This document shows positions 7,755-42,814 of a stretch of DNA of 64,000 bases, piece by piece; position 1 is the stretch's first letter; each line of letters opens with the position of its first letter. The translations under genes were made by a program, and so were the position numbers. The notes under the pieces are model-generated. The model made no database searches and was not told the origin of the DNA. It was given only the letters and a program-made list of their open reading frames with translations. The DNA lies in IMG/VR virus record IMGVR_UViG_3300036846_000743, positions 62,001 through 126,000 of that record; one strand, given 5' to 3'.

Positions 7755-8215
7755 CCTTGCCCCGACTGTAATGCATCCTGCACATGCTTGAGCACGCCAC
7801 CCAGGAAGACGCCTGCGTCGTAGGAATGACCGAACCGCCGGCCCATCGCGTGAGCGATGCACCGGACCGGTGTGGCGTGCCTGGCACGGAAGGCACGCTC
7901 CATGATCGCGATATAGTCGCCCTGGGTCTTGACCGAGATCACGTCGCCGCAGGTCCCAGGATCGGTACCATCCTGGATCAGCTCGGCGTAATTGGTATCG
8001 ATGTTCTCGCGGTCAAAGCCAGCCGTGATGCCGGCGATATCGAGAAGATCCAGCGCCCCCGCATCCTTGTGCTTGGACTGCACGCTGGTCTCAGGGATGT
8101 TCCATTTGCGGGGCCCATAGCCGCGAGATGCTTTACCCTGCTGACCATCCTGCGTGGTCAGGTCCTTGAGATTGTTCGTGAAGACATCGTCGATCTTGCC
8201 CTTGCTCGCCATCAT
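7751..8215 (-). CDS. Hypothetical protein (154 aa)
   Basis: Translationally coupled on both sides (ATGA). Confidence 0.6.
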   Translation of the reverse strand: MMASKGKIDDVFTNNLKDLTTQDGQQGKASRGYGPRKWNIPETSVQSKHKDAGALDLLDIAGITAGFDRENIDTNYAELIQDGTDPGTCGDVISVKTQGDYIAIMERAFRARHATPVRCIAHAMGRRFGHSYDAGVFLGGVLKHVQDALQSGQG

Positions 8216-9003
8216 AGCACCTCCGAGTCCTCGAGTTCGTTCAGCATCCGCTGGATCCGCGCCGCCCGCTGGCTGACGGCCCCCGGCGAGATCCGCAGCC
8301 GGCGAGCGATCTGGGTGGCCGGCAGCTTGGGAGCACCGTTTAAGCCCATGCCGTACTCTAAGATCACCTGGTCATGCGGGTCGAGGTCATGATAGAGAAA
8401 CTGAGCCCTGAGCATAGATCGATCAGGCCCTTCGACGGCCGGCTCGAACCCGCCACCGCCACTCCCTTCTTCATCCTCATCGGACAGAGCGGCCATCCGG
8501 CCTTCAGGTATTGCCGGCCGGTAGCCCCTGATGTGTGCGATGCGTCGCCGGGACAGCCCTATGTGATCTGACAGCTCCATGTCCGACGGATCACGGCCCA
8601 GCTGATCACGCAGCTCGGTCTCGGACTCGGTCAGGTGCTGTTGATCAAGCGCCACCGCTTCAGGAACCTTGATCGTCTGTGCCTGCTGCGCACTGTAGCG
8701 GCGCAGCCCCTGAAGGTGGGCCATCAGGTGGGTCTTGAGGCTGGCCTTGGTCGGGTCATACTTCTTGGCCGCATCCAGGGCAATCATCCGCGCGCGGCTG
8801 CGCATCATAGGGTTGACGTTCCGGCCGCCGTAGACAGAAAGCCCTTCATCGATCACCGGATTGATCGCTTTCAGGAACTCGTCGGACTGGCCGGGACCGG
8901 GATTGGCTGACCACGCATGAAAGGCGGGAGCGTACTGTGACTCGAGCCGGTCCTTGGGCGCGGCGAAGCCGGGCTCGAGCTTGTACGGGGTGAAACCAGG
9001 CAT
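8212..9003 (-). CDS. Phage sigma70-family RNA polymerase sigma factor (263 aa)
   Basis: Region 2-like AAKKYDPTKASLKTHL, region 3 LGRDPSDMELSDHIGLS, region 4 HTH LDPHDQVILEYGMGLNGAPKLPATQIARRLRISPGAVSQRAARIQRML. Confidence 0.88.
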   Translation of the reverse strand: MPGFTPYKLEPGFAAPKDRLESQYAPAFHAWSANPGPGQSDEFLKAINPVIDEGLSVYGGRNVNPMMRSRARMIALDAAKKYDPTKASLKTHLMAHLQGLRRYSAQQAQTIKVPEAVALDQQHLTESETELRDQLGRDPSDMELSDHIGLSRRRIAHIRGYRPAIPEGRMAALSDEDEEGSGGGGFEPAVEGPDRSMLRAQFLYHDLDPHDQVILEYGMGLNGAPKLPATQIARRLRISPGAVSQRAARIQRMLNELEDSEVL

Positions 9004-11913: not shown

Positions 11914-14900
11914 CTAACTTCCAGCAACAGGTGTCGTGTTCATGCTCCCACTGCCAGTAATTACAGCCCTGTTATCAGCAGTGAGTATCAATTCGCCTTT
12001 CATATCCAGCTGACCTCCTCCCGTTGTTGCCTGCTTGTTGGCCGCCTCGGCCGCTATGGCCGACTTGATCTGCGTATCACTCTGCTCGACCGCCTCAGTG
12101 ATCGTCCGCATCGAACTGAAGCCCATCAGCTCGCCGGCTTCTGCGACGAGTCCCTCGGCGCCCTTTGACTTCTTGAGTTCTTCCATGCTGATGCCAGTGA
12201 CTTGGGCGATGTTCTTGAGAGCCTTCCGGGCATCGATCTTCTTCTGCAAGGCATATCGCTTCTGTGCGGACTCGGGCCCTTCGCCCAGGACGTCTTTCAG
12301 CCTGGCCTCTTCCGCCTCGTCGCCCATGATCCCCATCTCACGAACCATGCTGGAGATGATCGCCTTGTTCTTGTCCGTGTCAGTCTGCGTCTGCTCGGCG
12401 AAGTACTCGGTCCATTCCTTCTTCTCGGCCTCCGGCATGGGCGTGCGCTTGTCGGCCGGCAACTGCATCCGCTCGGCCATCCAGTCGCGATCTCCGGTAT
12501 TGGCCTTCTCGAGCGCACGGACCTCGTCGCCAATTCCCTCCATGCCCTTGGGCAGCACGGCCGTACCCGCCAGGATGTCTTCCACACTCACCTTTGCTTT
12601 GGCGGCAAGACGAGCCATCTCGTCGTACCTACCCTTGATCGCCTTTGCCTTGGCGAAAGAACCTGCTCCGGCGCCTTCCAGCGAGCCCAGGTTCCCGAGC
12701 ATGTAGTTACTCGCCTGACGGCCAAGATCGTAACTGGCCTTAGCGTGCCGCTTGCGAATCGCGATCGCTTCGTCGCGCGCGGCCCCTTTCTCGCTGGGTA
12801 TGGCCGTCTTGCGTGCTTCGTCCAGCTCTTTCGTACGGGCTGATGCTTCGACCAGGTCCCGCGCACCAATCTTGGCCTTGAGGTCGATACCAGCCGCATC
12901 CCCCTGGACAGTCAGGCCACCGGTCAACTCGCCAAGCTGCTTGAGCCTTTCCCGATCGGCGGCAAAACGTGCGTCCTTCATTCTCGGATCGTCATCCATC
13001 TTGCCTTCCCGGATCAGATCGAAGTCCTTGTCCTCGAAGCCCATCTTCTTGTAGATCTCGTTCTGATCCCTGCGGATCTTCTCCTTGTCGGCAGCGCCGC
13101 CGGCAGTCGTGAAATATCCAACTCGCTTGCGCAATTCATCCGAGATGCCCTTGGTGGCAGGATCGAGGACCCGCTGCCTGGCAGCCTGGAATGCGGCCTC
13201 GTCGGCACCTTTGGCGAGAACACCGGCATCTTCCAGCACGCCTCTCAGTCGTTGCCTGGCCGTATCGCCGCCCTGCTGGATCGCCTCGATATCCCCCGTG
13301 ATCTCCCTGAGCCTGTTCGTCTTCTGCTCTGGTGTCAGCTTGGCATTGCCCTGGACTTCCCGGAATTGCTGCACTGACTCGACCAGGGCCTGCGACAGGA
13401 CGTTCAGCTTCTTCTTGGCTCCGAGCCCGCCTTCGGCTTCGAGCGCATTGACGTCGACCTTACCCAGACTCTTCAGGATGTCTTCCGGATTCACGCCGCC
13501 CATGACCTTCGCGACCGCCGCGCCCAGGTTCGGCGACGGCTGCTGGAACTCGTCCATCAAGCGTGCCAGCCATGGGGCCTGCGCCATACCGCCCAGTGCC
13601 GTGCGCAGCGCCACCTCGGCCTGTCGCTCTTCGCCGATGACCCGGGTGCGCTCCCGCACCTCCGGCCTGTTCAGGTCACGAACAGCAGCCCAGCTGGCAT
13701 AGCCGTATGGCGCTTCGATAACCCGCTGCGCGAGCAGGCCGGTGACACCCGCAGCCATCGTGCCAAACTTTCCCGCCGGGAACATGCTGTTGAACTGGGC
13801 GTTGGCCTGATCATCGGTCATCCCCGGATTCGTAGCCTTGAGCTGAGCCACCACAGACTCGCGGGCCGCGGTCCGCATGTTCGTATCGCGCTTCTTCATG
13901 TCAAGCCAGTCGGCCTGCGACATGTTCATTGCGGAGGTTGTCATGGCCAGGGTGGCATTCCTGGCGATATCTCGTCTCCGGTCCACATCCATGCCGGGAG
14001 CAGTCTCTTGCAGCTGGTTCAGAACAACGCCCTGAGTCTCCAGCGCCAGCAGCCCTGCGAGTTCTTCACCCTGTCGCGGCCGCACGAGATTCTGCCCGAT
14101 GTTGAACCGGTCGATGAACTCACGGTTGGCAGCCGGGGCCCGCAGATAGGCCCGCGCCATCGCCGGATCGACCTTGCTCGCCTGCATGAGCTGGAACCAC
14201 CGCTCCTCGGTCACATCCAGCGACTCTTGCTCGCCGCGCTCATTGATGAACGTCCTCGCGCCTGGCGTCCTGATCGCCTTCATCAGGTTTGCCAGCGGCC
14301 CCTGGACATTGCCCTGGCCAAGGCCGCGTTCCTGCGCCTCGAAGAGCCGGGCGGTGGCGCCCAGGCGATTGGCCATCGGCGAAGCCGCCGCGTTGAGCTG
14401 AAGCTCCCGCTCCATGATCGACAGCTCTTCGCGGCTGCGCCGGCCCCAACCTCCCAGGTCGCCTTCACCAACCTGACCGTAAGCAGCGCCGAATTCGGCA
14501 GCGGCCTGCGATGCGCGCAGACCGAAGATGGGCTCTATGCCCCGCGCCCTGGCCGAGGCGGCGCCGCCGGCCGCAAACGCCTCGAACGCCTGCATTCCCA
14601 GGCCACTGCTGCGGGCGATGACCTGGGTCGTGCGCACGGTCCGCTCCAGCTGCGCCGGGTTCATCGTCGCCAGGCCGCCCTGGGTCAGCTTGTCGAGACC
14701 GTCGATCAGCTCCTTCATCGGCGCGTTGGGCCGGCCGATATCACCGAAGATCTCCCGCATCGCCGACACGGCACCTGCCATGTCCTTGAGCCGGTTGCCG
14801 ACGCGATTGGCGTCGAACCCACGCAGAAGTGCGTCGAACTGGTTCGGAGTCTCCCGCTGAAGCGCCTCTACCGTTTGCCTGGCAAGCCCCGGGGCCGCAG

Positions 14901-15780
14901 CCAGCTGGCGAACCTGCTCATTGCCGGCGGCCGCGGCAGCAGCAGGCGTTGCGGCAAGGAGTGCGGCGAACCGTTCCGGATCACGCTGGCGGATCAGCCG
15001 GTACATGTCTTCGCGGCCGGCAGCCGTGCCGGTCAGCTCTTCGAACTGTCTGGCCCTGGACATGGTGCCGATCGATCTGCCCATCACTCCGTGAGCTTGA
15101 AGCTCGTCATACATGGCGCCGGCCTGGCCGGCAGTGATGCCACGCCAGGCGGCCAGGTCGGCACCCTCACCGAAGAACCGCCGGTGCATCTCGGCAGCCA
15201 GCGTGCCGGCCGATGCGCCCGACAGTCCGGTGCGGCCAGTCGTCGGATCCACGGCCTGGAGGCCGGCGCGGTGCAGAAACGAGGACATGACCGTCGCCGA
15301 ACCCCGGATGCCATGCGCGGCATCGAATACCTCGGGCATCGCCATGGCAAAGAACGGCGCCATCGTCGCCATGTCGCCGGCCATGACGTTGGCCGAGCGC
15401 TGCTGTTCCAGCCCCCAGGGCGTACCCTGCATCTGACCAATGCCGCGGATGATCCGGACATAAGTCTCGCGATCGGCCTGGGAAGCAGTCTGCATGGCCA
15501 GCTGCTTGCCCTGCCAGTATTGCTTGGCGCGATGCTGATCGTAGAAGCTCTGCACGGGCGCGAACTGGGCCGGCATCATGCCGCCGTGCCCGAAAAAGGA
15601 GCTGATCAGCGGCTGGAGCAGCATCGGGACGAGCGGGTTCGCCATGATCCCGCCGCCAAAGCCCTCGCCGATATTGAGATCAAGGCGCTGCTGAGGCTCG
15701 AGATTCGCACTGCCCCACATCCCGCGATACGTGAGGAGTTCTTGCCGCAGCTGTTCCTGATCCATGCCGACTGCCATCAA
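11914..15780 (-). CDS. Tape measure protein (1288 aa)
   Basis: Long Ala/Gly/Met-rich helical ORF directly after two chaperone-like genes and before the hub/baseplate genes. Confidence 0.75.
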   Translation of the reverse strand: MMAVGMDQEQLRQELLTYRGMWGSANLEPQQRLDLNIGEGFGGGIMANPLVPMLLQPLISSFFGHGGMMPAQFAPVQSFYDQHRAKQYWQGKQLAMQTASQADRETYVRIIRGIGQMQGTPWGLEQQRSANVMAGDMATMAPFFAMAMPEVFDAAHGIRGSATVMSSFLHRAGLQAVDPTTGRTGLSGASAGTLAAEMHRRFFGEGADLAAWRGITAGQAGAMYDELQAHGVMGRSIGTMSRARQFEELTGTAAGREDMYRLIRQRDPERFAALLAATPAAAAAAGNEQVRQLAAAPGLARQTVEALQRETPNQFDALLRGFDANRVGNRLKDMAGAVSAMREIFGDIGRPNAPMKELIDGLDKLTQGGLATMNPAQLERTVRTTQVIARSSGLGMQAFEAFAAGGAASARARGIEPIFGLRASQAAAEFGAAYGQVGEGDLGGWGRRSREELSIMERELQLNAAASPMANRLGATARLFEAQERGLGQGNVQGPLANLMKAIRTPGARTFINERGEQESLDVTEERWFQLMQASKVDPAMARAYLRAPAANREFIDRFNIGQNLVRPRQGEELAGLLALETQGVVLNQLQETAPGMDVDRRRDIARNATLAMTTSAMNMSQADWLDMKKRDTNMRTAARESVVAQLKATNPGMTDDQANAQFNSMFPAGKFGTMAAGVTGLLAQRVIEAPYGYASWAAVRDLNRPEVRERTRVIGEERQAEVALRTALGGMAQAPWLARLMDEFQQPSPNLGAAVAKVMGGVNPEDILKSLGKVDVNALEAEGGLGAKKKLNVLSQALVESVQQFREVQGNAKLTPEQKTNRLREITGDIEAIQQGGDTARQRLRGVLEDAGVLAKGADEAAFQAARQRVLDPATKGISDELRKRVGYFTTAGGAADKEKIRRDQNEIYKKMGFEDKDFDLIREGKMDDDPRMKDARFAADRERLKQLGELTGGLTVQGDAAGIDLKAKIGARDLVEASARTKELDEARKTAIPSEKGAARDEAIAIRKRHAKASYDLGRQASNYMLGNLGSLEGAGAGSFAKAKAIKGRYDEMARLAAKAKVSVEDILAGTAVLPKGMEGIGDEVRALEKANTGDRDWMAERMQLPADKRTPMPEAEKKEWTEYFAEQTQTDTDKNKAIISSMVREMGIMGDEAEEARLKDVLGEGPESAQKRYALQKKIDARKALKNIAQVTGISMEELKKSKGAEGLVAEAGELMGFSSMRTITEAVEQSDTQIKSAIAAEAANKQATTGGGQLDMKGELILTADNRAVITGSGSMNTTPVAGS

Positions 15781-26650: not shown

Positions 26651-29600
26651 TCAGCTTCCCGGAGGATACGGGGTCTGCCCCCGGACCGGCGGGACCGCAG
26701 CGTTGGTATCCACGTCGGCCTTCCAGGCTGTCGTCGTATCCTCGGCATAGATAGTCATCGGCAGGATCCCACTCGTTGCGCTCCAGTTCGTCGTCCATTG
26801 TATCAGCGACCGTGCTGCCTGGAGTATCGTTCGCCTGATCGTGGAAGCCGCGGAAGCGAAGCTCCGTGTCAGAGTCGCATCCGCGATGGCCGTGATCTCG
26901 GTCTGGGGCAGATCGATGAAGTCATACGTGTCGTAGGCTACGATGTCGAATTTGACATTGGTCGCCGGGAACCCTGGAACGACAGCCCTCAAGATGGTCT
27001 CGCCCAGCGTGCTGCGATCGGCAGTATCGCCGGCCAGCTGGTACCAGCCATCGCCAATCTCGCTGACGACCCCAGCGGCCGGCACCCAGCTTGTGGCCCC
27101 GGACTTCAGAAGCTGGACCGTCGGATGGGCGCCGAGGATCGGAGTGATCCGGTCGGCTTGGGTCATCAGGAAGCCGATCGGATAGTAAGTGATGGCTCGC
27201 GGATCGGCCCTGCGGCCCGCCACGGCCGACGACTTGCGATCCTTGCTGGCCATGGAGATCGGAATGCGGGTCCCGGTCCGGGGCGACATCGGCCGGCCCT
27301 GGATTGGATGGGGAGCGATATCGGTGATGGTATCGTGGCTGCGGACCCTGACCCGGCACACGACCGTGTCTGTCAGCTGCACGACTTCCGGCAGCTTCAA
27401 GAGCATCGTGTCGACCGTGTGACTCTCCTGGTACGACACCACTGCCAGAGTATCGGTCTGATAGGGCAGATCACGCCCGCCGCTGATCGTAGCGTCGGTG
27501 CTGTGCCAGAAGACATGGAAGTTGGCACAGACCGTGTCCGTACTGTGGTGATCGGTGAAGGTTCCTCGCTTCAGCCCCCAGGTGTAATGGGGCACCCAGG
27601 ACGAGGCTCGGCGCCCGGTGTCAGTACTGTGAGTCTTCGCCCGCGTCGCGTAGGCCAGCGTGTTAGTCGTGTGCGTGGTGATCACGGTCCGGAACGCTCG
27701 AAGATCAGTCTTGTGCGTCCGGGTTCGCGTGCCGTACTTCAGAGCATCAGTCTTGCTCGAGGCCGTGCGCACGGCGTAAAGCAGGCTATCGGTCGCGGAC
27801 GATCTCGCGAAGGTCGCACGGGCTCGCGTGTCGGTATTGTGGGCCCGGCTGCTCGTCCCTCGTTTCACCGTGTTGGTGGTATGAGTTCGAGTACTTGCCT
27901 TGAGCAGCAGAGCATCGGTGGCGTGGGTCACAACGGCCGTTTGCCGCAGCCGCGAATTCGTGGCATGGGTGCGTATGCTGGTGCCGCGGCACCGGATATC
28001 GGTACGGTGAGTGCAAGTCACCGCCCCGAGGCAATCAACATCCGTGGTGTGCGTCCTGAAGCCGACGCCACGCATCGACGGGAAGGAGTCAGCACCGTGA
28101 GCGATGATCGAACCGAGTCGGCAGCGCGTGTCAGTGCCGTGCGAACGCACCGAAGTGAGATAACGCAGGGCGCTGGTGGTGTGCGTCTTGATCCTAGTTC
28201 CGGCGCGGTCAACATCGGTCGAATGCACCTGCGTCGTTACGCTGCGTATTGCGGCACGAACGTCGGTGGTATGCGCCCAGACAACATTGAGTCGGCAGCG
28301 CGTGTCAGTGCCGTGCGACCGCGCCGGAGTAAGATAACGCCGCGTGTCGGTCGTGTGGGTTCGAGTCTGGCTCCCGGCGAGATCAGCATCGGTAGTATGG
28401 GCCTGGACGACGGTGCCGCGGAGCGCAAGCTGGCTATTCGTACTGTGAGTGATCGTATTGGCGCCACGAACCAGCGCATTGGTGCCATGCGGACGGCCCG
28501 CAACGGCGCGTTTCAACGCATCAGTCGTCTGGGTCCGGGTCGTTGACCCGGCAAGATCGGCATCAGCGAAGTGCGACTGGTATCCAACGCCAAGCTGGGC
28601 GAGCCAGCTATCGGTGTTGTGGCTGCAACTGTGGGTGTCAAGAAGCCAGGCATCGGTACTGTGCGTGCAGACGGCAGCGGCGAAAGTCCCGACATCAGTT
28701 GTGTGGCTGTGAGTGATCGCTCCGCCGAGATCGACGTCAGTCGTGTGAGATTGAAGCGCGACGCCAAGCTGAGCGGTCCAGCTAGCAGTGCTATGAGCCC
28801 GGCTGGAAGTAGCAAGGAGCCGAGCGTCGGTGCTGTGGATACGGACGGTGGTAGCGAAAGCCAGGGCGTCAGTCGCATGCGTCCAGGTAACCGACCCGTG
28901 GAGATCGATGTCGGTGTAGTGAACCCAGGAAGAGGTACTGAGCCTGGAAACCCGGCTGTCTGTGCTGTGAGTCCAGGTGACCGTCGTTGCCACCTGGACC
29001 AAGGTTCGCAGGACCAGCTGCGTCGCGCGCAGGTTGACACCAGTCGGCTGCACGAGGGTACGAACTGACAGCTGGGTATCACGCAGGTTGACACCAGTCG
29101 GCTGCACGAGAATGCGAACCGGCAGCTGAGTGTCGCGCAGGTTGATGCTAGTTGAAGTGCTGGTAGTGTGAGTCTTGGTCAGAGCGCCCTTGGCGTCCGT
29201 GTCGGTGACGTGAACCCGCGGGTAGCCCACCGGAGTCGCAACTATGCTGTCCGCGGTATGACTGGACAGTGATGACGCAAGGAGCAGAGCATTGGTGCCG
29301 TGATTGACAGTTCGAGACAGGTAAGTCGCACTGTCAGTCTTGTGAACCTGGAGCAGGGCTCCCTTGGCGTTCGTGTCGGTGCCGTGAACTCGCGGGTAGG
29401 CTGCCGAGATCGCGACCGTAGTGTCGGTTGTATGGGTTCGAGTCTGGGTCGCCCTGAGACTGACATCAATGCTATGGGTTTTCGCGACGGTGGTCAGCCG
29501 CGAAGTCTGCATATCAGTGCTGTGAGTCTTGATGGTCGTCGCGCGCACCAGAATATCGGTGCTATGAGCCTTCACGGCGATCCCTGCCGTCAAGGCAAGT

Positions 29601-32566
29601 GCATCGGCACCATGGGTTCGGGTCAGGGTCGCCCAGCGACCTGTATCGGTGGTGTGAGTCTTCACCGACGTTATGCAGGGCACAGCGTCGGTCGCGTGGG
29701 TCCGGGTCACGGGCCCCTTGAGATCGGCATCAGTCGCGTGAATCTTCGAGACAGTCGCCAGTACCACAGCCCGGACGTCTGTGGTGTGCGTATGGATGGC
29801 GACAGAGTAGGACCGAACATCGGTCGTATGGGTGCGAACAGCCGTGGCCTGGACCAGCGTATCGGTCGTCTGGATCTTGCTCGCCATGGCACGAGCCAGT
29901 GCATCGGTCGTTTGGGTCCTGCTTGCCACGGCGCGCGGCAGAACGTCGGTCGTGTGAATCCTGATCGTCGTGGCACGAACCAGAACATCAGTCGTCTGGG
30001 TCTTGACCGACGTAGCGCGAAGCAGAACGTCGGTCGTCTGGGTACGAGTCAAGGCCCCCTTGAGATCGGCATCGGTCGCGTGAGTCCTCGAGACAGTCGC
30101 CAGCAGAGCAGCCCGTACATCGGTCGTGTGAATCTTGGCGGCCGTACCACGGACCAGGCTGCTAGTGGCATGGATCTGGGTCTGCCCGCCAGGCAACAGA
30201 CTGTCGGTCGCATGGGCTCGAGTCGGGGCCCCCTTGAGGTCCGCGTCGCTGGCATGGGCTTTCGAGCTGGTAACCAGTCGCGAAGCCTGCGTATCGGTAC
30301 CATGAGTCTTGGTGGTCGTCGCGCGCAACAGAACGTTGGTAACGTGACCCTTGGCTCCTGCCACTACCGTTATTGCGCCGGTATCAGTGCCATGCGTCCT
30401 GCTCGTAGGCGTGACGTTGAACGGTTCATTGCCGCCGGCCAGGCTCTGGATCTGATCATTGTTAAGCGCGACGCCGTAGATCCGGACGTCATCGAGATCA
30501 CCGGTGAGATAGGTGGAAACGCCAGTGGTCGCACTCCGCCCAAGATACGTATGCATCGTCGGGCTGGGAGCAGGCACCTGAGCGCTCGTACTCGACTGAC
30601 GCCTGCCACCGACGAAGATGCGAGTGAAGGTGGGATAGACAATTCCAGTGACATGGGCCCAGACTCCAGCCGTCAGGGCCGCGTCGGCCTGCACCGTGGC
30701 GGTGCCGCCGTTGCCCGTCAACATGTACGGTATGCCGCTGGTCAGGCCCAGGGTCCAGCCCTGCGTCGCCGGGTTGTCCGTGTGACCTATGAGCGAGTAA
30801 TTACCAACAGCCGTAGGCCGGACCCAGGCCGATACCGTGAAGTTGGTAGTGAGGTTATGGGTCGGCTGAATCCCGGCGTCGAGATAGTTGGAGCCACCAG
30901 GAAAATGGCGAGCGCCTGGGTTGGTGAAGCCGTTAGGCAGAGGGCTGGTCGGCGCTGGAGTCGACGCGGTTGTGGTGCCAGGCGTATCAGTAGCATTGGC
31001 AACAGGCGGCGCCGAGTCGATCGCGACCTGAGCAGTTCCGGTCTCGTCGAGCGCCCAGTGGGCGATCAGAACGCCGAGCAGATTGCTGGAAGTGCCGTGA
31101 GTTCTGGTTACCGACGACTGTTGTACAGCGTCGGTGCTGTGCGTCTTGACTGTTGTCGCCAGCGAGACGGCATCGGTGGTATGAGTCCTGACCGGCGTTA
31201 CTCGTAGCGAAGCATTGGTCGTGTGGGTCTTGGTGGCCGTAGCGAGAGCCAGGGCGTTTGTCGTGTGAGTCTTGACCTGGACTCCCTTGGCATCTGCATC
31301 GGTAGCATGAGCCCTGGCCGCCGTCACAAGCGCCGAGACTTGCGAAGAAGTGCCGTGACTCGTGGTGTTTGCGGCACGAGCCAGATCATCAGTCTGATGC
31401 ACCCGGGTTGCCGTCGCCCTCGACAGCGCATTGGTAGTATGGGTCCGGACAGAGGTTCCCCGGAGCAGCATATCGGTCGAATGCGTCCTGACCGACGTCG
31501 CCCGCAGTGAAAGACTGGTACTGTGCGTGATCGAGCGACGGAAGACCAGCATCGAGCTGGTGCCGTGACTCGTGGGCACGCTGATATTCGCCTGGGAGAC
31601 ACCGCCCAGCCAGAGGCCAAAAATGCTCCTGTAGCCCGGTATGTGAACGCCAGGCGCCAGCTTCAGCAACGTACTGGTGCCGTGACTCCGGGAGGCCCAA
31701 GCATGTACGTAGGTCGCATCAGTCGTACTGGAGCGGGTCTGGGTACGCCGCGAGACGCCATCGGTCGAACTGGTACGAGTATGCGTTGCTGGTAGTAAAG
31801 CGTCGGTGCTGTGACTCGTGACGACGGTAGTGAGAATGAAAAGCCTGGTATCAGTGCTGTGAGTCTGGATCGTGGGTGTAGGCCCGGCGACCGTGTAGCT
31901 GCTGGTGCCGTGAGTCTTTGTCTGCGTTACCGGCGGAGGATTCAGTAATTCGAGTATGAAACCGACCCAGTTCCCGGTCGCATTGAAGGAGCAGGCACCT
32001 GTATAGTTTCCGGAGGTGGTCGTGACGTTGTAGGCACCCTGCGACACGGAAGTGGTGGCAGATACAATACCGCCCACTGCGACCGAAGTAGCCGGGGTCC
32101 CTGCCATGGCAGCTGTCGTCGGGGCAGCAACCGTCCCGAACGCCATGACGATGATCTCGGGACTGGGCAGGGACGGTATGACGATGGTCCCAGTGTTGGG
32201 CTTGGTACTGGATCCAGTAGAACTGTTGTACCCGCCCACCACATTAGCGAACGTCGTGGCAGTGCCCGAGACCTCGAAGACGTTGAGCGTGAGATGGTTC
32301 ACACCACCTGTGGCACCGAAGGTACCCGTAGTAGTCTGAGATGCCGAGTTCGCACGGACATAGCAAGCTACGCCGATGTTGGTGCCATTATCAGCCCGCG
32401 CTACCAGGGTCCAACCACTGGGCGTAGTCGGCGTTCCGACTGTTCCACCCTGCCAGAACAAAAAGGCAACGAGGCAGTTACCAGCCGTAGTGGCTGCGGG
32501 CCACGACGCACCGACTGTCGAGGTAGTAGAGCCATTCGTAGCAGTTTGGACGTAAGCAGCAGGCAT
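26651..32566 (-). CDS. Giant virion fibre/appendage protein: N-terminal beta domain, T-H-x-T-D repeat stalk, LamG domain, C-terminal anchor domain (1971 aa)
   Basis: Repeat stalk is visible in the translation; LamG signature AHWALDE...FTVSAWVRP...WAHVTG...LTGDLDDVRIYGVAL at about 30431-31075. Confidence 0.8.
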   Translation of the reverse strand: MPAAYVQTATNGSTTSTVGASWPAATTAGNCLVAFLFWQGGTVGTPTTPSGWTLVARADNGTNIGVACYVRANSASQTTTGTFGATGGVNHLTLNVFEVSGTATTFANVVGGYNSSTGSSTKPNTGTIVIPSLPSPEIIVMAFGTVAAPTTAAMAGTPATSVAVGGIVSATTSVSQGAYNVTTTSGNYTGACSFNATGNWVGFILELLNPPPVTQTKTHGTSSYTVAGPTPTIQTHSTDTRLFILTTVVTSHSTDALLPATHTRTSSTDGVSRRTQTRSSTTDATYVHAWASRSHGTSTLLKLAPGVHIPGYRSIFGLWLGGVSQANISVPTSHGTSSMLVFRRSITHSTSLSLRATSVRTHSTDMLLRGTSVRTHTTNALSRATATRVHQTDDLARAANTTSHGTSSQVSALVTAARAHATDADAKGVQVKTHTTNALALATATKTHTTNASLRVTPVRTHTTDAVSLATTVKTHSTDAVQQSSVTRTHGTSSNLLGVLIAHWALDETGTAQVAIDSAPPVANATDTPGTTTASTPAPTSPLPNGFTNPGARHFPGGSNYLDAGIQPTHNLTTNFTVSAWVRPTAVGNYSLIGHTDNPATQGWTLGLTSGIPYMLTGNGGTATVQADAALTAGVWAHVTGIVYPTFTRIFVGGRRQSSTSAQVPAPSPTMHTYLGRSATTGVSTYLTGDLDDVRIYGVALNNDQIQSLAGGNEPFNVTPTSRTHGTDTGAITVVAGAKGHVTNVLLRATTTKTHGTDTQASRLVTSSKAHASDADLKGAPTRAHATDSLLPGGQTQIHATSSLVRGTAAKIHTTDVRAALLATVSRTHATDADLKGALTRTQTTDVLLRATSVKTQTTDVLVRATTIRIHTTDVLPRAVASRTQTTDALARAMASKIQTTDTLVQATAVRTHTTDVRSYSVAIHTHTTDVRAVVLATVSKIHATDADLKGPVTRTHATDAVPCITSVKTHTTDTGRWATLTRTHGADALALTAGIAVKAHSTDILVRATTIKTHSTDMQTSRLTTVAKTHSIDVSLRATQTRTHTTDTTVAISAAYPRVHGTDTNAKGALLQVHKTDSATYLSRTVNHGTNALLLASSLSSHTADSIVATPVGYPRVHVTDTDAKGALTKTHTTSTSTSINLRDTQLPVRILVQPTGVNLRDTQLSVRTLVQPTGVNLRATQLVLRTLVQVATTVTWTHSTDSRVSRLSTSSWVHYTDIDLHGSVTWTHATDALAFATTVRIHSTDARLLATSSRAHSTASWTAQLGVALQSHTTDVDLGGAITHSHTTDVGTFAAAVCTHSTDAWLLDTHSCSHNTDSWLAQLGVGYQSHFADADLAGSTTRTQTTDALKRAVAGRPHGTNALVRGANTITHSTNSQLALRGTVVQAHTTDADLAGSQTRTHTTDTRRYLTPARSHGTDTRCRLNVVWAHTTDVRAAIRSVTTQVHSTDVDRAGTRIKTHTTSALRYLTSVRSHGTDTRCRLGSIIAHGADSFPSMRGVGFRTHTTDVDCLGAVTCTHRTDIRCRGTSIRTHATNSRLRQTAVVTHATDALLLKASTRTHTTNTVKRGTSSRAHNTDTRARATFARSSATDSLLYAVRTASSKTDALKYGTRTRTHKTDLRAFRTVITTHTTNTLAYATRAKTHSTDTGRRASSWVPHYTWGLKRGTFTDHHSTDTVCANFHVFWHSTDATISGGRDLPYQTDTLAVVSYQESHTVDTMLLKLPEVVQLTDTVVCRVRVRSHDTITDIAPHPIQGRPMSPRTGTRIPISMASKDRKSSAVAGRRADPRAITYYPIGFLMTQADRITPILGAHPTVQLLKSGATSWVPAAGVVSEIGDGWYQLAGDTADRSTLGETILRAVVPGFPATNVKFDIVAYDTYDFIDLPQTEITAIADATLTRSFASAASTIRRTILQAARSLIQWTTNWSATSGILPMTIYAEDTTTAWKADVDTNAAVPPVRGQTPYPPGS
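27350..31920 (-). repeat. Degenerate 14/16-residue coding repeat (T/S-H-x-T-D core)
   Basis: Example: ATSVRTHSTDMLLR GTSVRTHTTNALSR ATATRVHQTDDLAR; His spacing is 14 or 16; interrupted by the LamG domain. Confidence 0.9.
28995..29154 (-). repeat. 54-nt (18-aa) triplicated insert NLRDTQLxVRxLVQPTGV
   Basis: caggttgacaccagtcggctgcacgag occurs twice exactly; translation shows three units. Confidence 0.85.
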
Positions 32567-32576
32567 TTGTGGTCCG

Positions 32577-33137
32577 TCAGGTGGTCGGGCTCTGGCCTAC
32601 AATCGGATCGGCACCAGTCTGGCCGGTGGTGTTCATCTGCCAGGCCGTAGACGCATCGTCCTCGGTGCACACGGTGAGCAGGCCCGTGCCAGCGGCGATC
32701 GACCACTTGTTGCGCAGCAGTCGCATGGCCTGGAGCAGACAGCGGGCTGGCCAGCTCGCAATCTGTCGCCAGTCACGAGTCAGAACCGCGTCGGCGATGG
32801 CCGTGCGCTCGGCGGCCGGCAGGCTCACGGCGGCGAATGGATCGTACGAGACGACGTCGTACTTCTCGTCGTATGGGTCCGAGTTAGCGTCATCGACGTG
32901 GATCTTCAGCTCACCAAGCGTATCTCGATCAGCTGCGATGGGAGTCCAGCTGTACCAGCCATAGCCTGTCTCGCTGATGACACCGCTAGGATCCTTGGGA
33001 CCAAAAGCGGCACCATTCTTGGAGATCGTCAGACTGAGAAAAGCACTGCGCCCGGTGGCACCGGTGATGTGATCGGACTTGAGCACCAGCATGAACCCGA
33101 TCGGGTAATTGGTGCTGCTCTGCTGGCGTTCTTTCAT
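32577..33137 (-). CDS. Stand-alone paralogue of the C-terminal domain of the 1971-aa fibre (186 aa)
   Basis: YPIGF...GVISETGYGWY...DRDTLGE...YDVVSYD...TAIADAVLTR...LLQA...TAW...P aligns by eye with the fibre C-terminus. Confidence 0.8.
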   Translation of the reverse strand: MKERQQSSTNYPIGFMLVLKSDHITGATGRSAFLSLTISKNGAAFGPKDPSGVISETGYGWYSWTPIAADRDTLGELKIHVDDANSDPYDEKYDVVSYDPFAAVSLPAAERTAIADAVLTRDWRQIASWPARCLLQAMRLLRNKWSIAAGTGLLTVCTEDDASTAWQMNTTGQTGADPIVGQSPTT

Positions 33138-33173
33138 CGGTCTGTCTCCGAAACAAAGGAATGAACAGTCGTA

Positions 33174-34208
33174 TCAGGTCACTTTCTTGACGCCGAACTG
33201 GGCATTGTTGACTCCCGCAATAGTCCAGGCGAGACCGGTAGCCGGATCATGACCCTGGATGTCCGGATAGGCGTTGTAGGTTGTGGAACCGACGGGCTGC
33301 GCGCTTGTACCGTCGTAGTTGGTGCCACCGGATCGGTATTCCGGCACTGCCGTCGCGGTACCGGCCGAATCATTCTTGAGAATTGGGCAGGCCATTACCC
33401 CGTAGACGGTGCCTGCGGCCACCGGCAAAGCCGGGTAGGTATAGAGATCGATAGCCCCGGCGGCAGCAGTCTGGACGTAATTGGTATCGTCGTTGGCCGG
33501 GCTTTCATTGACCTGGGACCAGTTGGCGCCCGAGTCGGTACCGCCGCGGGTGAAACCGGTTACGAAACCGTTGCCCGTAGGCAGAGATGAGATCACCCGG
33601 CAGTCACCGCAGAAAATACCATCAGCACGACTGTAGAGATCGTCGAACCAGAGTTGCTGGCTGGCCTGGTTGCCGTCGAAAAACGTAAGCACGTTGGTAG
33701 TGGCGTTGGCAGTCGACTGCGTGTTGACACCAGTACCCGATACAACGACCACGCCATTGACTTTCAGCGTGAACGAACCGGTTGTACCGCTGCCGATCGT
33801 CGCCGAGAATTCGATGTAGTACCAGATATTGGCACTGAGTGGCTGCGTCGCTGTCCCGAGCGACGTGCCGTTACGGGTCACAAACAGCAGTCCAGTGGCA
33901 CTCAGCCGGACATCTACCTGATCCGCGCCGCTATCCTCGAAGATCAGGAAAGGCCCTCCGTTGATCTGGCTGAAACCGCTGGGCTTAAAGGCGAACCCGA
34001 CCGTGCGTGTCTGTTTGGACGGAAGCGTCAGTTTCACGTAGTCGGAGTAGCTGACGAGCATCAAACAGTTGCTGCCGTTGCGTCCACCGGAAGTGATCTG
34101 ATAATTACCAAAGACCGAAGTCCAGTAGCGGTTGATCTGTGCCGTGTTGTAGTCGTCGAATCCGTCGAAGTACTCGAGCGTGGTGTTGCTGACAGTGGAT
34201 ATGCTCAT
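33174..34208 (-). CDS. Concanavalin/LamG-like fibre-tip protein (344 aa)
   Basis: YFDGFDDY, TVGFAFKP, NIWYYIEFSATI, LKVNGVVV, WFDDLY beta-sandwich signature. Confidence 0.65.
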   Translation of the reverse strand: MSISTVSNTTLEYFDGFDDYNTAQINRYWTSVFGNYQITSGGRNGSNCLMLVSYSDYVKLTLPSKQTRTVGFAFKPSGFSQINGGPFLIFEDSGADQVDVRLSATGLLFVTRNGTSLGTATQPLSANIWYYIEFSATIGSGTTGSFTLKVNGVVVVSGTGVNTQSTANATTNVLTFFDGNQASQQLWFDDLYSRADGIFCGDCRVISSLPTGNGFVTGFTRGGTDSGANWSQVNESPANDDTNYVQTAAAGAIDLYTYPALPVAAGTVYGVMACPILKNDSAGTATAVPEYRSGGTNYDGTSAQPVGSTTYNAYPDIQGHDPATGLAWTIAGVNNAQFGVKKVT

Positions 34209-34211
34209 CGA

Positions 34212-34898
34212 TCATCCCTCATTGAAGGCGATGCCGCGCGTGCCCACGCGCTGGCTTCGGGACCGTGACGCCGCGATCCCCAGGGCAACAAGCGAGTCAG
34301 TCGAATATATGGCCGTTTTAGGTCCTGGCGTGTAGGTGCTGGTACCATGAGTCCTGGCCGTCGTTGCGCGCAGTGTACTACCAGTAGTGAAAGTCTTGGT
34401 TGCCGCGGCGGGCAGCAGAAAGTCGGTGGTATGGGTCCTGAGCTGCGTGGCGCGCAGCAGCAGATCCGTAGTGAAGATCCTGATCGACGTGGCACGCAGC
34501 AGCACATCGGTAGCATAGGTCCTGATCGACGTGGCGAGTGGCAGCGTACCGGTAGCATGGGTCCTGATCGACGTGGCGCGCAGCAAGACGTCAGTGCTGT
34601 GAGTCTTGGTTGTTCCTACCGTCTTCGGCAGGAGATCGGTAGTAAAGGTCCTGGTCGACGTCGCCCGACGCAGAAGGTCAGTACCATGCGTCCTGGTCGT
34701 CCCTACCGCCTGCCGCAGGAGATCGGTAGTAACGGTCCTGGTCGTCCCTACCGCCTTCGGCAGGAGATTGGTAGTAAAGGTCCTGGTCGACGTCGTGACC
34801 AGCTGGGCGCCGGTAGTATGTGTCTTGACGACGGTCGCCGGCCCGGTGGGCCCGAGAGCGGAAAACGGAACAGAAGCAAATGGTCGGGCAGCAAACAT
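34212..34898 (-). CDS. Short T-H-x-T-D repeat stalk protein (228 aa)
   Basis: Starts MFAARPFASVPFSALG, then about a dozen 14-15-aa repeats like those of the giant fibre. Confidence 0.75.
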   Translation of the reverse strand: MFAARPFASVPFSALGPTGPATVVKTHTTGAQLVTTSTRTFTTNLLPKAVGTTRTVTTDLLRQAVGTTRTHGTDLLRRATSTRTFTTDLLPKTVGTTKTHSTDVLLRATSIRTHATGTLPLATSIRTYATDVLLRATSIRIFTTDLLLRATQLRTHTTDFLLPAAATKTFTTGSTLRATTARTHGTSTYTPGPKTAIYSTDSLVALGIAASRSRSQRVGTRGIAFNEG

Positions 34899-37819: not shown

Positions 37820-38353
37820 TCAGGCTCCTTCCATGAACGAGGCTAACCAAGAACGGATGTCGAAGTCTGGGTTCTTGGTCTTCATGATCTTGATCATTGC
37901 ATCAACCACCATGTGGCAGTGGCGACAAGCAGCCCCCAGGTTGTCCTCGTCATGGCTACCTTCATATTCGCGAGGAACTAAGTGGTGAGTCTGGAGGTTC
38001 TTGGTACGGCCACAGAAGATACAGGCTTTATCCCGATCGATGATCTTGGTACTCAACTTTTCCCAGTTCTTGCTACGACCTCGTCTAAGTCTGAAGGCAT
38101 TATCGATCGGGGCTCGGTGTTTCTCGCCAAGACAAGTCAAGGAGCAGTAGATCACGGACGGCTTTCGACCGCTACGTCCTCCGGCCTCGAACTTGGTTCG
38201 GCATTGTGGACAGGTCTTCGTAACTCTCCGTTTGCGTGCCTCACAAGTTGCGCCTCGCCGTGAGTCGTGATAACACTTGCCCGAGCAGTGGACCATATCG
38301 GTTCTGGGTATGACCTTGCCGCAGGTACAGTAGCGAGTCGCGTGCTTGTTCAT
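37820..38353 (-). CDS. Free-standing HNH endonuclease with N-terminal Cys (Zn) repeats
   Basis: IIDRDKACIFCG...LQTHHLVP...HDEDNLGAACRHCHMVVD; CxC/CxxC repeats upstream. Confidence 0.88.
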   Translation of the reverse strand: MNKHATRYCTCGKVIPRTDMVHCSGKCYHDSRRGATCEARKRRVTKTCPQCRTKFEAGGRSGRKPSVIYCSLTCLGEKHRAPIDNAFRLRRGRSKNWEKLSTKIIDRDKACIFCGRTKNLQTHHLVPREYEGSHDEDNLGAACRHCHMVVDAMIKIMKTKNPDFDIRSWLASFMEGA

Positions 38354-38405
38354 CCCGCCAGGATACACAGATAAAGGCGGTCCTGACCACCTTCACCTGT
38401 CATAT

Positions 38406-41202: not shown

Positions 41203-42144
41203 TCAGGCGAAGTCAGCGCGGGCGAGGCCGCCGGTGTGGCCGATCGTGCCACCCATGGTCTCGTAGGCGAAGAACTCGAGAAGATATGCTTCTCTCTTTA
41301 TATACATCGTCGTGTCTTCCAAAACATACATTTTCCCAATAAACTTCGGATCAGCATACATGAATATGGTATCCGTAGGCACCAGATCATGTTTGATGCT
41401 GATGATCCAACGCTTATCGAGAAAGTCGGTCTCGCTCCAGCCATTTCGCAGCACGTCCTGGCTGAAGTCACCGCCCATCTCATCACGGCCCCACTTCATG
41501 ACCTCCTTGATGGAGATGTTGTTGATCAAGACGGTCGCGGCTTCGAGCCGCGCATCAGTGCTCGGCATGATCTTGAGCGAATCCAGCACCGAGTCGCGCG
41601 TGATGCCGCCATGGATCGTGACCCATTGGGGAATGCCCGACCAGGGCACGTTCAAGTCAGCGCCCATGAGCGCTAAGTTGGTTGCCCCTATGAGTTTGCT
41701 ATCCTCTTCCGCCAGCATGTCCTTGATAGCATTGTCAGAAAGGACCTGCCGGATGTCCATGATCCAGGTGCGGAGTTCGTCGACGTCCTTGGTGAACCGT
41801 GGTGTCACGATGCGATCGAACGCAACGCGATATCGCGGGCCGCGGATGTAGACGTTGGTGGGCAGGGTAGCGAAGGGAATGGAAATGGCAGCCGGCGAAT
41901 CCGGCTCTTTGTCCACAATCTTCACTGGTTTGTCGGTATCAACCTGCCGGTCCAGCTCATCATTGGCGATCTGGAGCGGCGGCATGATGCGTCGTGCGAA
42001 TCCATCTTCACGCATCTTGATGCGAGTGAAGTCGTTGACCGCGTCGATCGCGGTCTTGATCATCCCCGGGTTCGTCAGGTTAGCGAAGAGCGTCTCATTC
42101 ATGAGCTGCACTTCGGACCTGGTCATGATGGCGCCAGCTGCCAC
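41203..42144 (-). CDS. Major capsid protein, HK97/encapsulin-like fold (about 313 aa)
   Basis: REDGFARRIMPP...RYRVAFDRIVTPRFTKDVDELR...DIRQV...DMLAEEDSKLI...LEFFAYETMGGTIGH; GTG 42144 with GGAGGAG; follows protease, scaffold and decoration genes. Confidence 0.82.
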   Translation of the reverse strand: MAAGAIMTRSEVQLMNETLFANLTNPGMIKTAIDAVNDFTRIKMREDGFARRIMPPLQIANDELDRQVDTDKPVKIVDKEPDSPAAISIPFATLPTNVYIRGPRYRVAFDRIVTPRFTKDVDELRTWIMDIRQVLSDNAIKDMLAEEDSKLIGATNLALMGADLNVPWSGIPQWVTIHGGITRDSVLDSLKIMPSTDARLEAATVLINNISIKEVMKWGRDEMGGDFSQDVLRNGWSETDFLDKRWIISIKHDLVPTDTIFMYADPKFIGKMYVLEDTTMYIKREAYLLEFFAYETMGGTIGHTGGLARADFA

Positions 42145-42196
42145 TTTAGTCTCCTCCGTGAATGGGTATCCTGACGAACAAACGACGACGATTGAC

Positions 42197-42814
42197 TCAA
42201 GTGCACTTGGGGACGTAAACCGGCCAGAACGACAAGACCGGCACCCGATGGTGATTGATGTGATCAGCACGACTGACAACGGCACAGATCCCATTGGTCA
42301 AGTTGGTGACCGCAGTGCCCGGAGCCGGAAATGCCGTCCAGAACGCGGTAGCACCCAGCTTGCCAGCGAAGGATCGATCGACGCCGGTACCGACCGGGAA
42401 CATGGCCTCGGTGGGTGCGGTCAGCTGCTGACCAGGGGTGTAGTGGACGGTGGGATTCTGCGTGGGATCGCCCTGGAAGAATTCCGTCGTCTCCAGCTCG
42501 AAGCCGCCGGCGGCGACCAGGCCGGACATCTTGCCCGTGGGCGCGATGGCGGTCCAGTTATTCCCGCCAGGGTTCTGAACATCCAGCTCATGGGACCCCT
42601 GGAGCAGGAAGATCCCCATGTTGCTGGGGCCGAGACCCAGCTCGAACTCACCAGCTGCGTTGACATGGACGACGCTCCCGCCATAGACGGGATCAACCGT
42701 CACGTTGGCCGACAGAAACGCGTCGAAGTCAAGGGCAGCCTCATCGGGCCACCCTTTGAGTTCATCGAGGCAATGCTCGAACATCAGAATTGGACCGGTG
42801 TAAGCGGTAACCAT
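42197..42814 (-). CDS. Capsid decoration/cement-like protein (205 aa)
   Basis: Immediately upstream of the MCP; beta-rich, with GGFELETTEF and YTPGQQLTA. Confidence 0.55.
   Translation of the reverse strand: MVTAYTGPILMFEHCLDELKGWPDEAALDFDAFLSANVTVDPVYGGSVVHVNAAGEFELGLGPSNMGIFLLQGSHELDVQNPGGNNWTAIAPTGKMSGLVAAGGFELETTEFFQGDPTQNPTVHYTPGQQLTAPTEAMFPVGTGVDRSFAGKLGATAFWTAFPAPGTAVTNLTNGICAVVSRADHINHHRVPVLSFWPVYVPKCT

What the first reader, a model, noticed from the sequence alone, without database searches (positions are those of the whole stretch)
26651..32566. 1971-aa fibre with a periodic T-H-x-T-D stalk (several tens of His at 14/16 spacing)
Seen: two long stalks of His-centred repeats flank a LamG lectin-like domain, with separate N- and C-terminal globular domains. 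Known: trimeric T4 gp37 needles coordinate metal via periodic His. Inference: an intertwined beta-stalk with axial His/Asp metal sites, forming a very long neck or head whisker carrying a mid-stalk glycan-binding domain. I do not recognise this repeat family.
Basis: partly seen in the sequence, partly recalled or inferred. Interest (0 to 1): 0.65.

Follow-up and report, generated by a model that had tools for sequence, protein, structure and literature searches.

The report
Jumbo-phage fibre with new His repeat
A soil jumbo phage encodes a 1971-residue virion fibre whose stalk is made of about 80 copies of a 14-residue His-Thr-Thr-Asp repeat that no curated family or solved structure covers. 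The stalk carries a lectin-like domain, most likely for sticking to host surface sugars; the proposed metal-binding core is untested.

Summary
Window 26651-32566 (minus strand) is one intact 1971-aa ORF with about 80 repeats of 14 (sometimes 16) residues, consensus T-H-T-T-D-A-L-L-R-A-T-x-T-K. Of 92 His-to-His spacings, 58 are 14 or 16, against about 4 in shuffles. The layout is: N-terminal globular domain, stalk, Laminin_G_3 domain, stalk, three 18-aa repeats, stalk, C-terminal globular domain.

The host record is a complete 226-kb soil jumbo myophage. The gene lies between the capsid gene and the sheath gene, about 20 kb from the baseplate genes.

The repeat matches nothing in Pfam, PHROGs, NCBIfam, PDB sequences or cultured phages. 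A profile of it finds 818 metagenomic protein clusters. These combine it with lectin, Kelch, CBM, glycosidase and C1q/BclA-like domains.

The C-terminal domain is an Ig-like plus helical module with a weak fold-level resemblance to BppU_N and adaptor domains. It is also encoded as a free 186-aa protein next door. It is the conserved end, so it is probably the anchor.

A gp37-type metal core is not supported. There are only 2 HxH motifs, and His is replaced by Gln, Tyr or Phe in some units. Trimer modelling gave no answer.

Verdict: a real, uncharacterised fibre-repeat family. Its fold, oligomeric state, metal binding and place on the virion remain open.

The parts
26651..32566 (-). Whole gene: 1971-aa fibre protein (P0001), stop codon at 26651-26653
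   Evidence: Logan contigs tile it with 0 differences
31922..32566 (-). N-terminal globular domain, aa 1-215. No family match. Shared with P0004 (36% identity). A similar hydrophobic N-terminal motif appears at the start of many distant family members. Proposed distal tip.
   Evidence: atlas look-alikes are viral hypothetical proteins
31061..31915 (-). Stalk segment 1, aa 218-502: about 18 His-centred 14/16-residue repeats, with an irregular stretch at aa 265-333
30398..31060 (-). Mid-stalk LamG / concanavalin-like lectin domain, aa 503-723 (Pfam Laminin_G_3 covers aa 557-707)
   Evidence: 35-53% identical copies occur 2-7 times per protein in relatives
29147..30397 (-). Stalk segment 2, aa 724-1140: about 29 repeats, including the Gln-for-His units at aa 842, 856, 884 and 898
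28973..29146 (-). Three copies of a different 18-aa repeat (N-L-R-D-T-Q-L-x-V-R-x-L-V-Q-P-T-G-V), aa 1141-1198. The same repeat forms the N-terminus of relative P0005.
   Evidence: (DNA period 54)
27467..28972 (-). Stalk segment 3, aa 1199-1700: about 35 repeats
27200..27466 (-). Linker, aa 1701-1789. It corresponds to the conserved C-terminal tail of the split fibre class plus the start of the free 186-aa protein.
26654..27199 (-). C-terminal Ig-like sandwich plus helical module, aa 1790-1971. Proposed virion anchor.
   Evidence: AF2 model has pLDDT above 90 over the sandwich. TP901-1 ORF48 N-domain: Z 7.5, rmsd 2.5 A, 92 residues aligned. BFVD BppU_N and tail proteins: E 1e-6 to 1e-4. 51-55% identical in orthologues.
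32577..33137 (-). Free-standing 186-aa paralogue of the C-terminal module (38% identity to aa 1790-1967). Proposed adaptor for the split fibre.
   Evidence: conserved position in relatives L004 and L005
34212..34898 (-). 228-aa mini-fibre of the split class: about 12 repeats with His alternating with Phe, Tyr or Val, and a conserved C-terminal tail (S-R-S-R-S-Q-R-V-G-T-R-x-x-A-F-N-E)
33174..34208 (-). 344-aa protein (phrog_2448, function unknown) inserted between the mini-fibre and the adaptor. Absent at this place in relatives. Link to the fibre system is conjectural.

Best explanation
The gene encodes a long, flexible adhesin fibre of the virion of an uncultivated soil jumbo myophage. Its shaft is about 80 copies of a previously uncatalogued 14-residue repeat, [T/S]-H-[T/S]-T-D-[A/S]-L-[L/K]-R-x-x-x-T-x. 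In this repeat the invariant His and Thr sit two residues apart, so they would lie on the same face of a beta-strand, and residues 10-13 form a loop of variable length. The shaft is most likely an all-beta homotrimer. The conserved C-terminal Ig-like plus helical module fixes the fibre to the particle, most likely at the neck or head rather than the baseplate. The variable parts, the N-terminal domain and the mid-shaft LamG domain, point outward and bind host surface polysaccharide reversibly, which enlarges the capture radius before the baseplate engages. The phage carries a second, split version of the same system: a short His-repeat fibre whose conserved C-terminal tail is proposed to dock on the free 186-aa copy of the anchor module. 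Shown here: the repeat and its statistics, the domain order, the LamG membership, the fold of the anchor's sandwich, the synteny, the family size and the partner domains. Inferred: trimer, polarity, virion location, sugar binding and adaptor docking. The conserved His is read as a packed, hydrogen-bonding planar core or groove residue, not necessarily a metal ligand.
For: Phage structural context. The record is a complete 226-kb virus. All genes are co-oriented, in the order major head gene, fibre genes, three unknown genes, sheath, tape-measure-like protein, baseplate wedge. Repeat statistics. LamG. Partner domains in relatives are lectins, sugar-binding modules and glycosidases: LamG, Kelch, CBM_4_9, GH18, GH8, GH5, F5/8-C. 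Trimer hint: one member carries a BclA_C/C1q-type head, which is a trimer-forming fold, apparently at its N-terminus. Polarity: within the jumbo clade the C-terminus is conserved at 51-55% identity while the N-terminus and middle vary freely, and the siphophage-like clade likewise shares its own C-terminal end. Most family members are an N-terminal globular part followed by repeats running almost to the C-terminus. Anchor fold. The same module brackets a long central insert with a beta-helix-like look (by eye, untested) in the protein encoded a few genes after the capsid gene of a 40-kb phage. Location: the fibre is encoded upstream of tail genes in two unrelated phage types. Loop at positions 10-13: the 15- and 16-residue variants insert G/N/D-rich residues there.
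Against: There is no direct evidence of virion incorporation: no proteomics, no cultured relative. The trimer model gave no answer and the AF2 monomer had pLDDT 57, so fold and stoichiometry are unproven. The anchor's fold match is only moderate (Z 7.5, TM 0.37-0.49), generic Ig-like folds score similarly, and the BppU_N and SU10_adaptor HMMs do not match the genome. BppU-type anchors normally sit on tails and baseplates, which argues against a head location. Gene order is weak evidence in jumbo phages. In the siphophage-like relatives, genes with tail-protein PHROG hits also lie upstream of the fibre. The proteins between the fibre and the sheath have no recognisable family.
Confidence: 0.55

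Rival explanations
1. One reading: an intertwined trimeric beta-stalk whose axis is lined with metal ions held by the periodic His, with Asp or Thr, as in the T4 gp37 needle.
For: His is the most conserved residue of the repeat: 91.5% of 1774 units detected without using His. The invariant Thr two residues on would face the same side of a strand, as the second His of an HxH motif does. Three chains could therefore give 3 His plus 3 Thr per layer.
Against: The defining HxH motif is absent, with 2 instances in 1971 aa. There is no sequence relation to any known fibre family or solved chain. Substitutes for His are Gln, Tyr and Phe. Four Gln units fall within five consecutive repeats at aa 842-898, and in the 228-aa paralogue His alternates with Phe, Tyr or Val. 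Phe cannot bind metal, so the site tolerates loss of any ligand. In a strand, Asp at position +3 faces the opposite side from His. No usable model was obtained.
Confidence: 0.25
2. It is a conventional long tail fibre attached to the baseplate or distal tail, and is the phage's main receptor-binding protein. Its gene simply lies away from the baseplate cluster.
For: The anchor's nearest structural look-alikes are BppU N-domains, baseplate components, tail fibres and tailspikes. Jumbo phage structural genes are often scattered (my own general knowledge). No other obvious long fibre gene was recognised in the window.
Against: The gene is about 20 kb and more than 10 genes upstream of the baseplate wedge gene, directly after head genes. 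This placement recurs in syntenic relatives and in an unrelated siphophage-like clade, where it lies upstream of the connector and tape-measure genes. Other atlas look-alikes are portal-proximal adaptor and head-closure families.
Confidence: 0.3
3. The shaft is a single-chain beta-solenoid or beta-roll, one 14-residue coil per repeat, as in some ice-binding proteins. It would carry a stacked His/Thr ladder and be only about 40 nm long.
For: A repeat of 12-15 residues can form one coil (Tenebrio, spruce budworm and Lolium ice-binding proteins; my own knowledge). The Thr-rich composition (19% Thr) resembles those proteins. Ladders of identical residues are typical of solenoids.
Against: AF2 usually models single-chain solenoids confidently, but here it gave pLDDT 57 and a meander whose strands run through the loop that varies in length. 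There is hardly any covariation between adjacent units (z at most 3.2). A trimer-forming C1q/BclA-type head occurs in the family.
Confidence: 0.15

Closest known systems
T4 gp37 / R-pyocin fibre needle (HxH metal-binding triple beta-helix)
   Same: Long phage fibre with periodically placed His; probably beta-rich and possibly trimeric.
   Different: One His per repeat in an H-x-T context instead of HxH. There are about 80 regular 14-residue units rather than a few metal sites. No sequence similarity. His can be replaced by Gln, Tyr or Phe.
Adenovirus / reovirus sigma1 / PRD1 P5 triple beta-spiral shaft (about 15-residue repeats)
   Same: Repeat length of 14-16 residues, a conserved short turn motif and a loop of variable length. 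The shaft carries a distal globular head.
   Different: The alternating hydrophobic pattern and the Gly/Pro turn of the beta-spiral are not evident; the core positions here are His and Thr. No profile match to any solved chain.
TP901-1 BppU (ORF48) N-terminal domain, Pfam BppU_N; also SU10 adaptor
   Same: The Ig-like sandwich of the C-terminal module superposes on it (Z 7.5, rmsd 2.5 A, 92 residues). BFVD hits are BppU_N and tail proteins. The proposed role as an attachment domain is the same.
   Different: It lies at the C-terminus instead of the N-terminus. It is followed by a helical sub-domain. The Pfam HMMs do not match. The phage is a jumbo myophage.
T4 fibritin (wac) whiskers, T4 Hoc, phi29 gp8.5 head fibre
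   Same: Accessory fibres encoded with head and neck genes that aid adsorption. Hoc is also anchored by its C-terminal domain (my own knowledge).
   Different: Fibritin is a coiled coil, gp8.5 is a helix-turn-helix supercoil (PMC6542822), and Hoc is a string of Ig domains. None has this repeat.
BclA-type collagen-like filaments with C1q-like heads
   Same: One family member combines the shaft with a BclA_C/C1q-type head, the same logic of a trimeric head on a repetitive stalk.
   Different: The stalk here has no Gly-x-y triplets, and the head is apparently N-terminal.

Membership tests
T4 gp37-type His-metal needle | Periodic HxH motifs supplying six His per metal site | tested here: not met
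   Only 2 HxH in 1971 aa, at aa 925 and 1286; the repeat motif is H-x-T-D.
T4 gp37-type His-metal needle | Sequence or profile similarity to known tail-fibre families or solved fibres | tested here: not met
   Pfam at E up to 1 gives only Laminin_G_3. PHROGs gives none. The repeat profile against PDB sequences gives 0 hits at E up to 10.
T4 gp37-type His-metal needle | Bound metal on the trimer axis | not testable with these tools
   The trimer job gave no answer. Replacement of His by Phe, Tyr or Gln argues against an obligatory site.
Triple beta-spiral shaft (adenovirus type) | Repeat of about 15 residues with alternating hydrophobic core positions, a Gly/Pro turn and a variable loop | tested here: inconclusive
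   The period of 14-16 and the variable loop at positions 10-13 fit. The core pattern (His, Thr) does not. No reliable model.
Laminin_G_3 (PF13385), concanavalin-like lectin/glucanase superfamily | Pfam HMM score above the gathering threshold | tested here: met
   78.8 bits against a cut-off of 27.6, E 6e-22, aa 557-707, full-length model match.
BppU_N (PF10651) attachment domain | HMM match | tested here: not met
   No match in the whole genome at E up to 10; the control genomes did respond.
BppU_N (PF10651) attachment domain | Fold of the N-terminal Ig-like sandwich | tested here: inconclusive
   3uh8: Z 7.5, rmsd 2.5 A, 92 aligned. BFVD BppU_N proteins: E 7e-5 to 8e-4. Generic Ig domains score nearly as well.
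T4-type neck proteins near the gene (gp14 PF11649, gp15 PF16724) | HMM match in the genome | tested here: inconclusive
   No match, but the control genomes gave no signal either, so the test has no power.

The most novel reading that the evidence does not exclude
The H-T-T-D 14-residue repeat is a new fibrous protein fold. It would be a trimeric beta-shaft with a continuous His/Thr ladder that binds metal or senses pH, and phages would use it to build whiskers up to about 100 nm long on the neck or head. These would be anchored by the C-terminus through a plug-in Ig/helical adaptor and strung with exchangeable lectin and glycosidase beads.
Probability: 0.3. Interest if true: 0.75.

Novelty: new variant of a known kind. 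Interest (0 to 1): 0.55.

Why it matters
Phage fibres decide what a phage sticks to. Their shafts have repeatedly yielded new protein folds, such as the beta-spiral, the triple beta-helix and the gp8.5 supercoil. Here a regular repeat found in at least 818 protein clusters is missing from every curated library searched and from cultured phages, so a whole class of virion appendages is currently annotated as hypothetical. The family is modular: shaft units, lectin or enzyme beads, and a fused or separate anchor. That makes it a good system for studying how host range evolves in soil phages, and a possible scaffold for displaying binding domains. If the His ladder binds metal or titrates with pH, it would be a new way to stiffen or switch a fibre.

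Tried and rejected
1. Trimer prediction of 11 repeats (aa 1505-1658) with an in-register alignment: after six busy refusals the job ran and returned 'no answer' (score 0.00, own fold uncertain). It is no evidence either way.
2. AF2 monomer of the same segment: pLDDT 57, a 12-residue-strand meander. I rejected it because it puts the variable-length loop (positions 10-13) in mid-strand.
4. The search for related loci with the repeat alignment failed because no sufficiently conserved 7-10-column stretch exists.
5. tblastn against 50,697 cultured or deposited phages found nothing with the whole protein, two repeat segments, the 186-aa protein or a distant homologue. P0092 hit only two uncultured records.
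6. Literature searches for the motif and for jumbo-phage LamG fibres found nothing relevant. The phi29 head-fibre paper (PMC6542822) and the phage 7-7-1 paper (PMC12796354) gave comparison points only. PMC3064346 is not held.
7. Read-through or recoding of the three in-frame upstream ORFs with TGA stops was considered and rejected. Relatives have separate genes in differing frames, and the fibre-A protein of a relative ends at the same place. No alternative genetic code was used.
8. PDB sequence searches for the N-terminal domain, the two proteins encoded next downstream (409 and 315 aa) and a relative's 739-aa neighbour found nothing meaningful.
9. Covariation analysis of 1209 units showed only local coupling among positions 7-12 (sub-types of unit) and nothing that fixes the fold.
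10. CRA_rpt Pfam hits in Lys-rich relatives are judged compositional coincidence.

Full report
**1. The observation**

Window 26651-32566 holds one uninterrupted 1971-codon ORF on the minus strand. The protein is 19% Thr and 4.7% His.

- It has 93 His. Of the 92 consecutive His spacings, 41 are exactly 14 and 17 are exactly 16. Shuffled versions of the protein give 4.4 such spacings on average and never more than 14.
- Autocorrelation peaks at 14, 28 and 42 in aa 216-500, 716-1140 and 1196-1700, and shows nothing in the three globular parts.
- Printed in register, the protein shows 76 units with consensus T-H-[T/S/G]-T-D-A-L-L-R-A-T-x-[T/V]-[R/K].
- A matrix built only from relatives, and ignoring the His position, still finds 54 units here against about 1 in shuffles. 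Of these, 44 carry His, 6 Gln, 3 Ser and 1 Thr.
- Pfam finds one domain, Laminin_G_3, at aa 557-707 (E 6e-22).
- Between stalk segments 2 and 3 lie three copies of an unrelated 18-residue repeat.
- Contigs made by a different assembler from a soil metagenome run tile the gene without a single difference and at even depth. That run may be the source sample, so this checks the assembly and is not an independent occurrence.

Two points are added: the strand is minus, and the post-LamG stalk is in two pieces.

**2. Where it sits**

The window is bases 62001-126000 of a 226,073-bp viral record rated complete. GC is about 61%, there are no tRNAs in the window, and all long ORFs are on the minus strand.

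In the direction of transcription the order is:
- a major-head-protein-like gene (41203-42294) and an HNH endonuclease;
- a 228-aa His-repeat protein, a 344-aa phrog_2448 protein and a 186-aa protein;
- the 1971-aa gene;
- three unknown genes of 409, 315 and 240 aa;
- a 932-aa sheath and a 187-aa gene;
- a helical 1288-aa tape-measure-like protein;
- a baseplate-wedge gene at 5605-7272.

The fibre gene is therefore at the head/neck end of the structural block, about 20 kb from the baseplate genes. The sheath's only relatives among deposited phages are distant (27-29% identity; Salmonella phage Arash and Vibrio phages).

**3. Relatives and the two fibre classes**

A word-based search found 45 relatives. 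The closest lie on contigs of 220-250 kb.

Two of these contigs were fetched and are syntenic. Each shows: a fibre ending in a conserved tail (S-R-S-R-x-Q-R-V-G-T-R-x-x-A-F-N-E), then a 183-186-aa gene, then a fibre with a fused C-terminal domain, then genes of about 409, 315 and 229 aa, then the sheath.

- The free 186-aa protein is a paralogue of the last 180 residues of the 1971-aa protein (38% identity).
- The linker of the 1971-aa protein resembles the tail of the first fibre plus the start of the free protein.
- So there is a split fibre (class A plus adaptor) and a fused fibre (class B).
- In this phage class A is only 228 aa, and a 344-aa gene has been inserted before the adaptor.
- The three ORFs happen to share a frame, with TGA stops between them. 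Relatives have them in other frames, and a relative's class-A protein ends at the same residue. I read this as coincidence and claim no recoding.

**4. How big the family is**

The repeat has no match in Pfam, PHROGs or NCBIfam. An 11-unit profile has no match to any PDB chain sequence at E up to 10, and no cultured phage matches.

The same profile, run against 1.84 billion representative proteins, finds 818 clusters at E up to 1e-3, 440 at 1e-10 and 175 at 1e-30.

From 1209 units of 14 residues, the family logo is [T/S]-H-[T/S]-T-D-[A/S]-[L/N/F]-[L/K]-R-K-x-x-T-[K/V/R/L]. Variants of 15 and 16 residues carry their extra residues, rich in Gly, Asn and Asp, at positions 10-13. That segment is therefore a loop.

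Most members have an N-terminal globular part of 200-550 aa, followed by repeats that run almost to the C-terminus.

Partner domains are LamG, Kelch propellers, CBM_4_9, GH18, GH8, GH5, F5/8-C and an apiosidase-like domain. One member (P0135) has a BclA_C/C1q-type domain, apparently at its N-terminus.

**5. The ends**

Within the jumbo clade the C-terminal module is 51-55% identical among class-B proteins, and the class-A tail is likewise conserved. The N-termini range from a globular domain to bare repeats, 18-aa repeats or other domains. The siphophage-like clade shares a different C-terminal end. Constant C-terminus plus variable remainder is the usual signature of anchor versus receptor-binding parts, so I infer C-terminal anchoring.

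AF2 with a 30-sequence alignment models the C-terminal module with pLDDT above 90 over an Ig-like sandwich, followed by two helices and a poorly modelled tail.
- In PDB the best phage match is the N-terminal domain of TP901-1 ORF48/BppU (Z 7.5, rmsd 2.5 A, 92 residues), alongside the 80alpha and NF5 baseplate proteins. Generic Ig domains score close behind.
- BFVD returns BppU_N-containing proteins, tail proteins, baseplate components and tailspikes at E 1e-6 to 1e-3.
- The ESM atlas returns viral clusters, including the SU10_adaptor, BppU_N and HCP families, at TM 0.36-0.49.
- The Pfam HMMs for BppU_N and SU10_adaptor do not match the genome.

So the module works like an attachment domain but is not a member of those families.

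In a 40-kb phage (L011), a 646-aa protein is encoded a few genes after the portal, scaffold and capsid genes. Its C-terminus matches the helical sub-domain (43% identity over 68 residues). By eye its N-terminus resembles the sandwich, with a long central part that looks beta-helix-like between them; neither of these two impressions was tested.

**6. Location on the virion**

Only gene order bears on this. In the jumbo clade the fibres lie between the head genes and the sheath. In four siphophage-like contigs the His-repeat fibre lies upstream of a gene of about 730 aa, one of about 250 aa, the connector genes, the major tail gene and the tape measure. In both cases this is not where distal tail fibres are usually encoded.

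This favours a neck or head fibre. The BppU-like anchor, and the tail-protein PHROG hits upstream in the siphophage-like contigs, keep a tail location open. My estimate is about 45% neck/head, 30% tail/baseplate, and the rest undecided.

**7. The His and the metal idea**

His and the Thr two residues later are the invariant pair, so on a strand they share a face. Asp at +3 would face the other way.

The gp37-type HxH motif is absent. Across 1774 units detected without using His, position 2 is His in 91.5%, then Gln 2.5%, Tyr 1.4% and Phe 1.2%. In this protein four Gln units fall within five consecutive repeats. In the 228-aa paralogue His alternates with Phe, Tyr or Val.

A position that accepts Phe is a packing site for a planar side chain, not an obligatory metal ligand. 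Metal binding at the His-bearing layers is still possible, and I put it at about 25%.

The only support for a trimer is indirect: the C1q/BclA-type head in one member, and the general habit of phage fibres.

**8. Verdict**

This is a real member of a sizeable but uncatalogued family of phage fibre proteins built on a His-Thr-Thr-Asp 14-residue repeat.

The best reading is an accessory adhesin fibre, anchored by its C-terminus, that presents lectin-like domains to host polysaccharide. It is a new variant of a known kind of thing, the phage fibre. Its shaft fold, stoichiometry, metal content and attachment site are still to be determined.

Noticed in passing
window 32577-34898 (-): Three consecutive ORFs (228, 344 and 186 aa) lie in one reading frame, separated only by TGA stops. 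The first and last are paralogues of parts of the big fibre. Relatives lack the middle gene and use other frames, so this is judged coincidence, not read-through.
   Followed up: yes
window 33174-34208 (-): A 344-aa protein of phrog_2448 (E 2e-32, function unknown; weak Polysacc_lyase hit, E 0.037) is inserted between the mini-fibre and its putative adaptor in this phage only. It could be a separate receptor-binding or depolymerase subunit.
   Followed up: partly
window 37820-38368 (-): An HNH endonuclease gene sits inside the structural gene block between the capsid and fibre genes. A relative has a LAGLIDADG gene and another an Endonuclease_7 gene at about the same place (L005, L004), suggesting a hotspot for homing endonucleases.
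   Followed up: no
window 8212-9003 (-): A 263-aa ORF among the baseplate genes hits a PHROG annotated as an RNA polymerase sigma factor (E 1e-6). This is an odd place for a regulator.
   Followed up: no
window 11914-15780 (-): A 1288-aa, largely helical, Ala/Gln/Arg-rich protein with a TTG start is probably the tape measure. Its region has the strongest AT skew in the window (-0.25).
   Followed up: partly
P0010 (locus L004 7267-12936) and P0002 (L005 10001-17476): Relatives carry 2-5 copies of an unannotated domain of about 150 aa (starting F-V-Q-R-D-N-W-R-N-G) between His repeats. No Pfam match is on record. It is another bead type worth folding.
   Followed up: no
L006, L026, L027, L028 (siphophage-like contigs): A distinct clade of 65-106-kb phages carries His-repeat fibres of 1161-3125 aa with Kelch or CBM heads and a shared small C-terminal domain. 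The gene is always just upstream of genes of about 730 aa and about 250 aa and the connector genes.
   Followed up: partly
G000:C1:134681-143614 (outside the window): The genome's largest ORF (2977 aa) and several others of more than 1200 aa lie outside the window. None carries the His repeat.
   Followed up: partly
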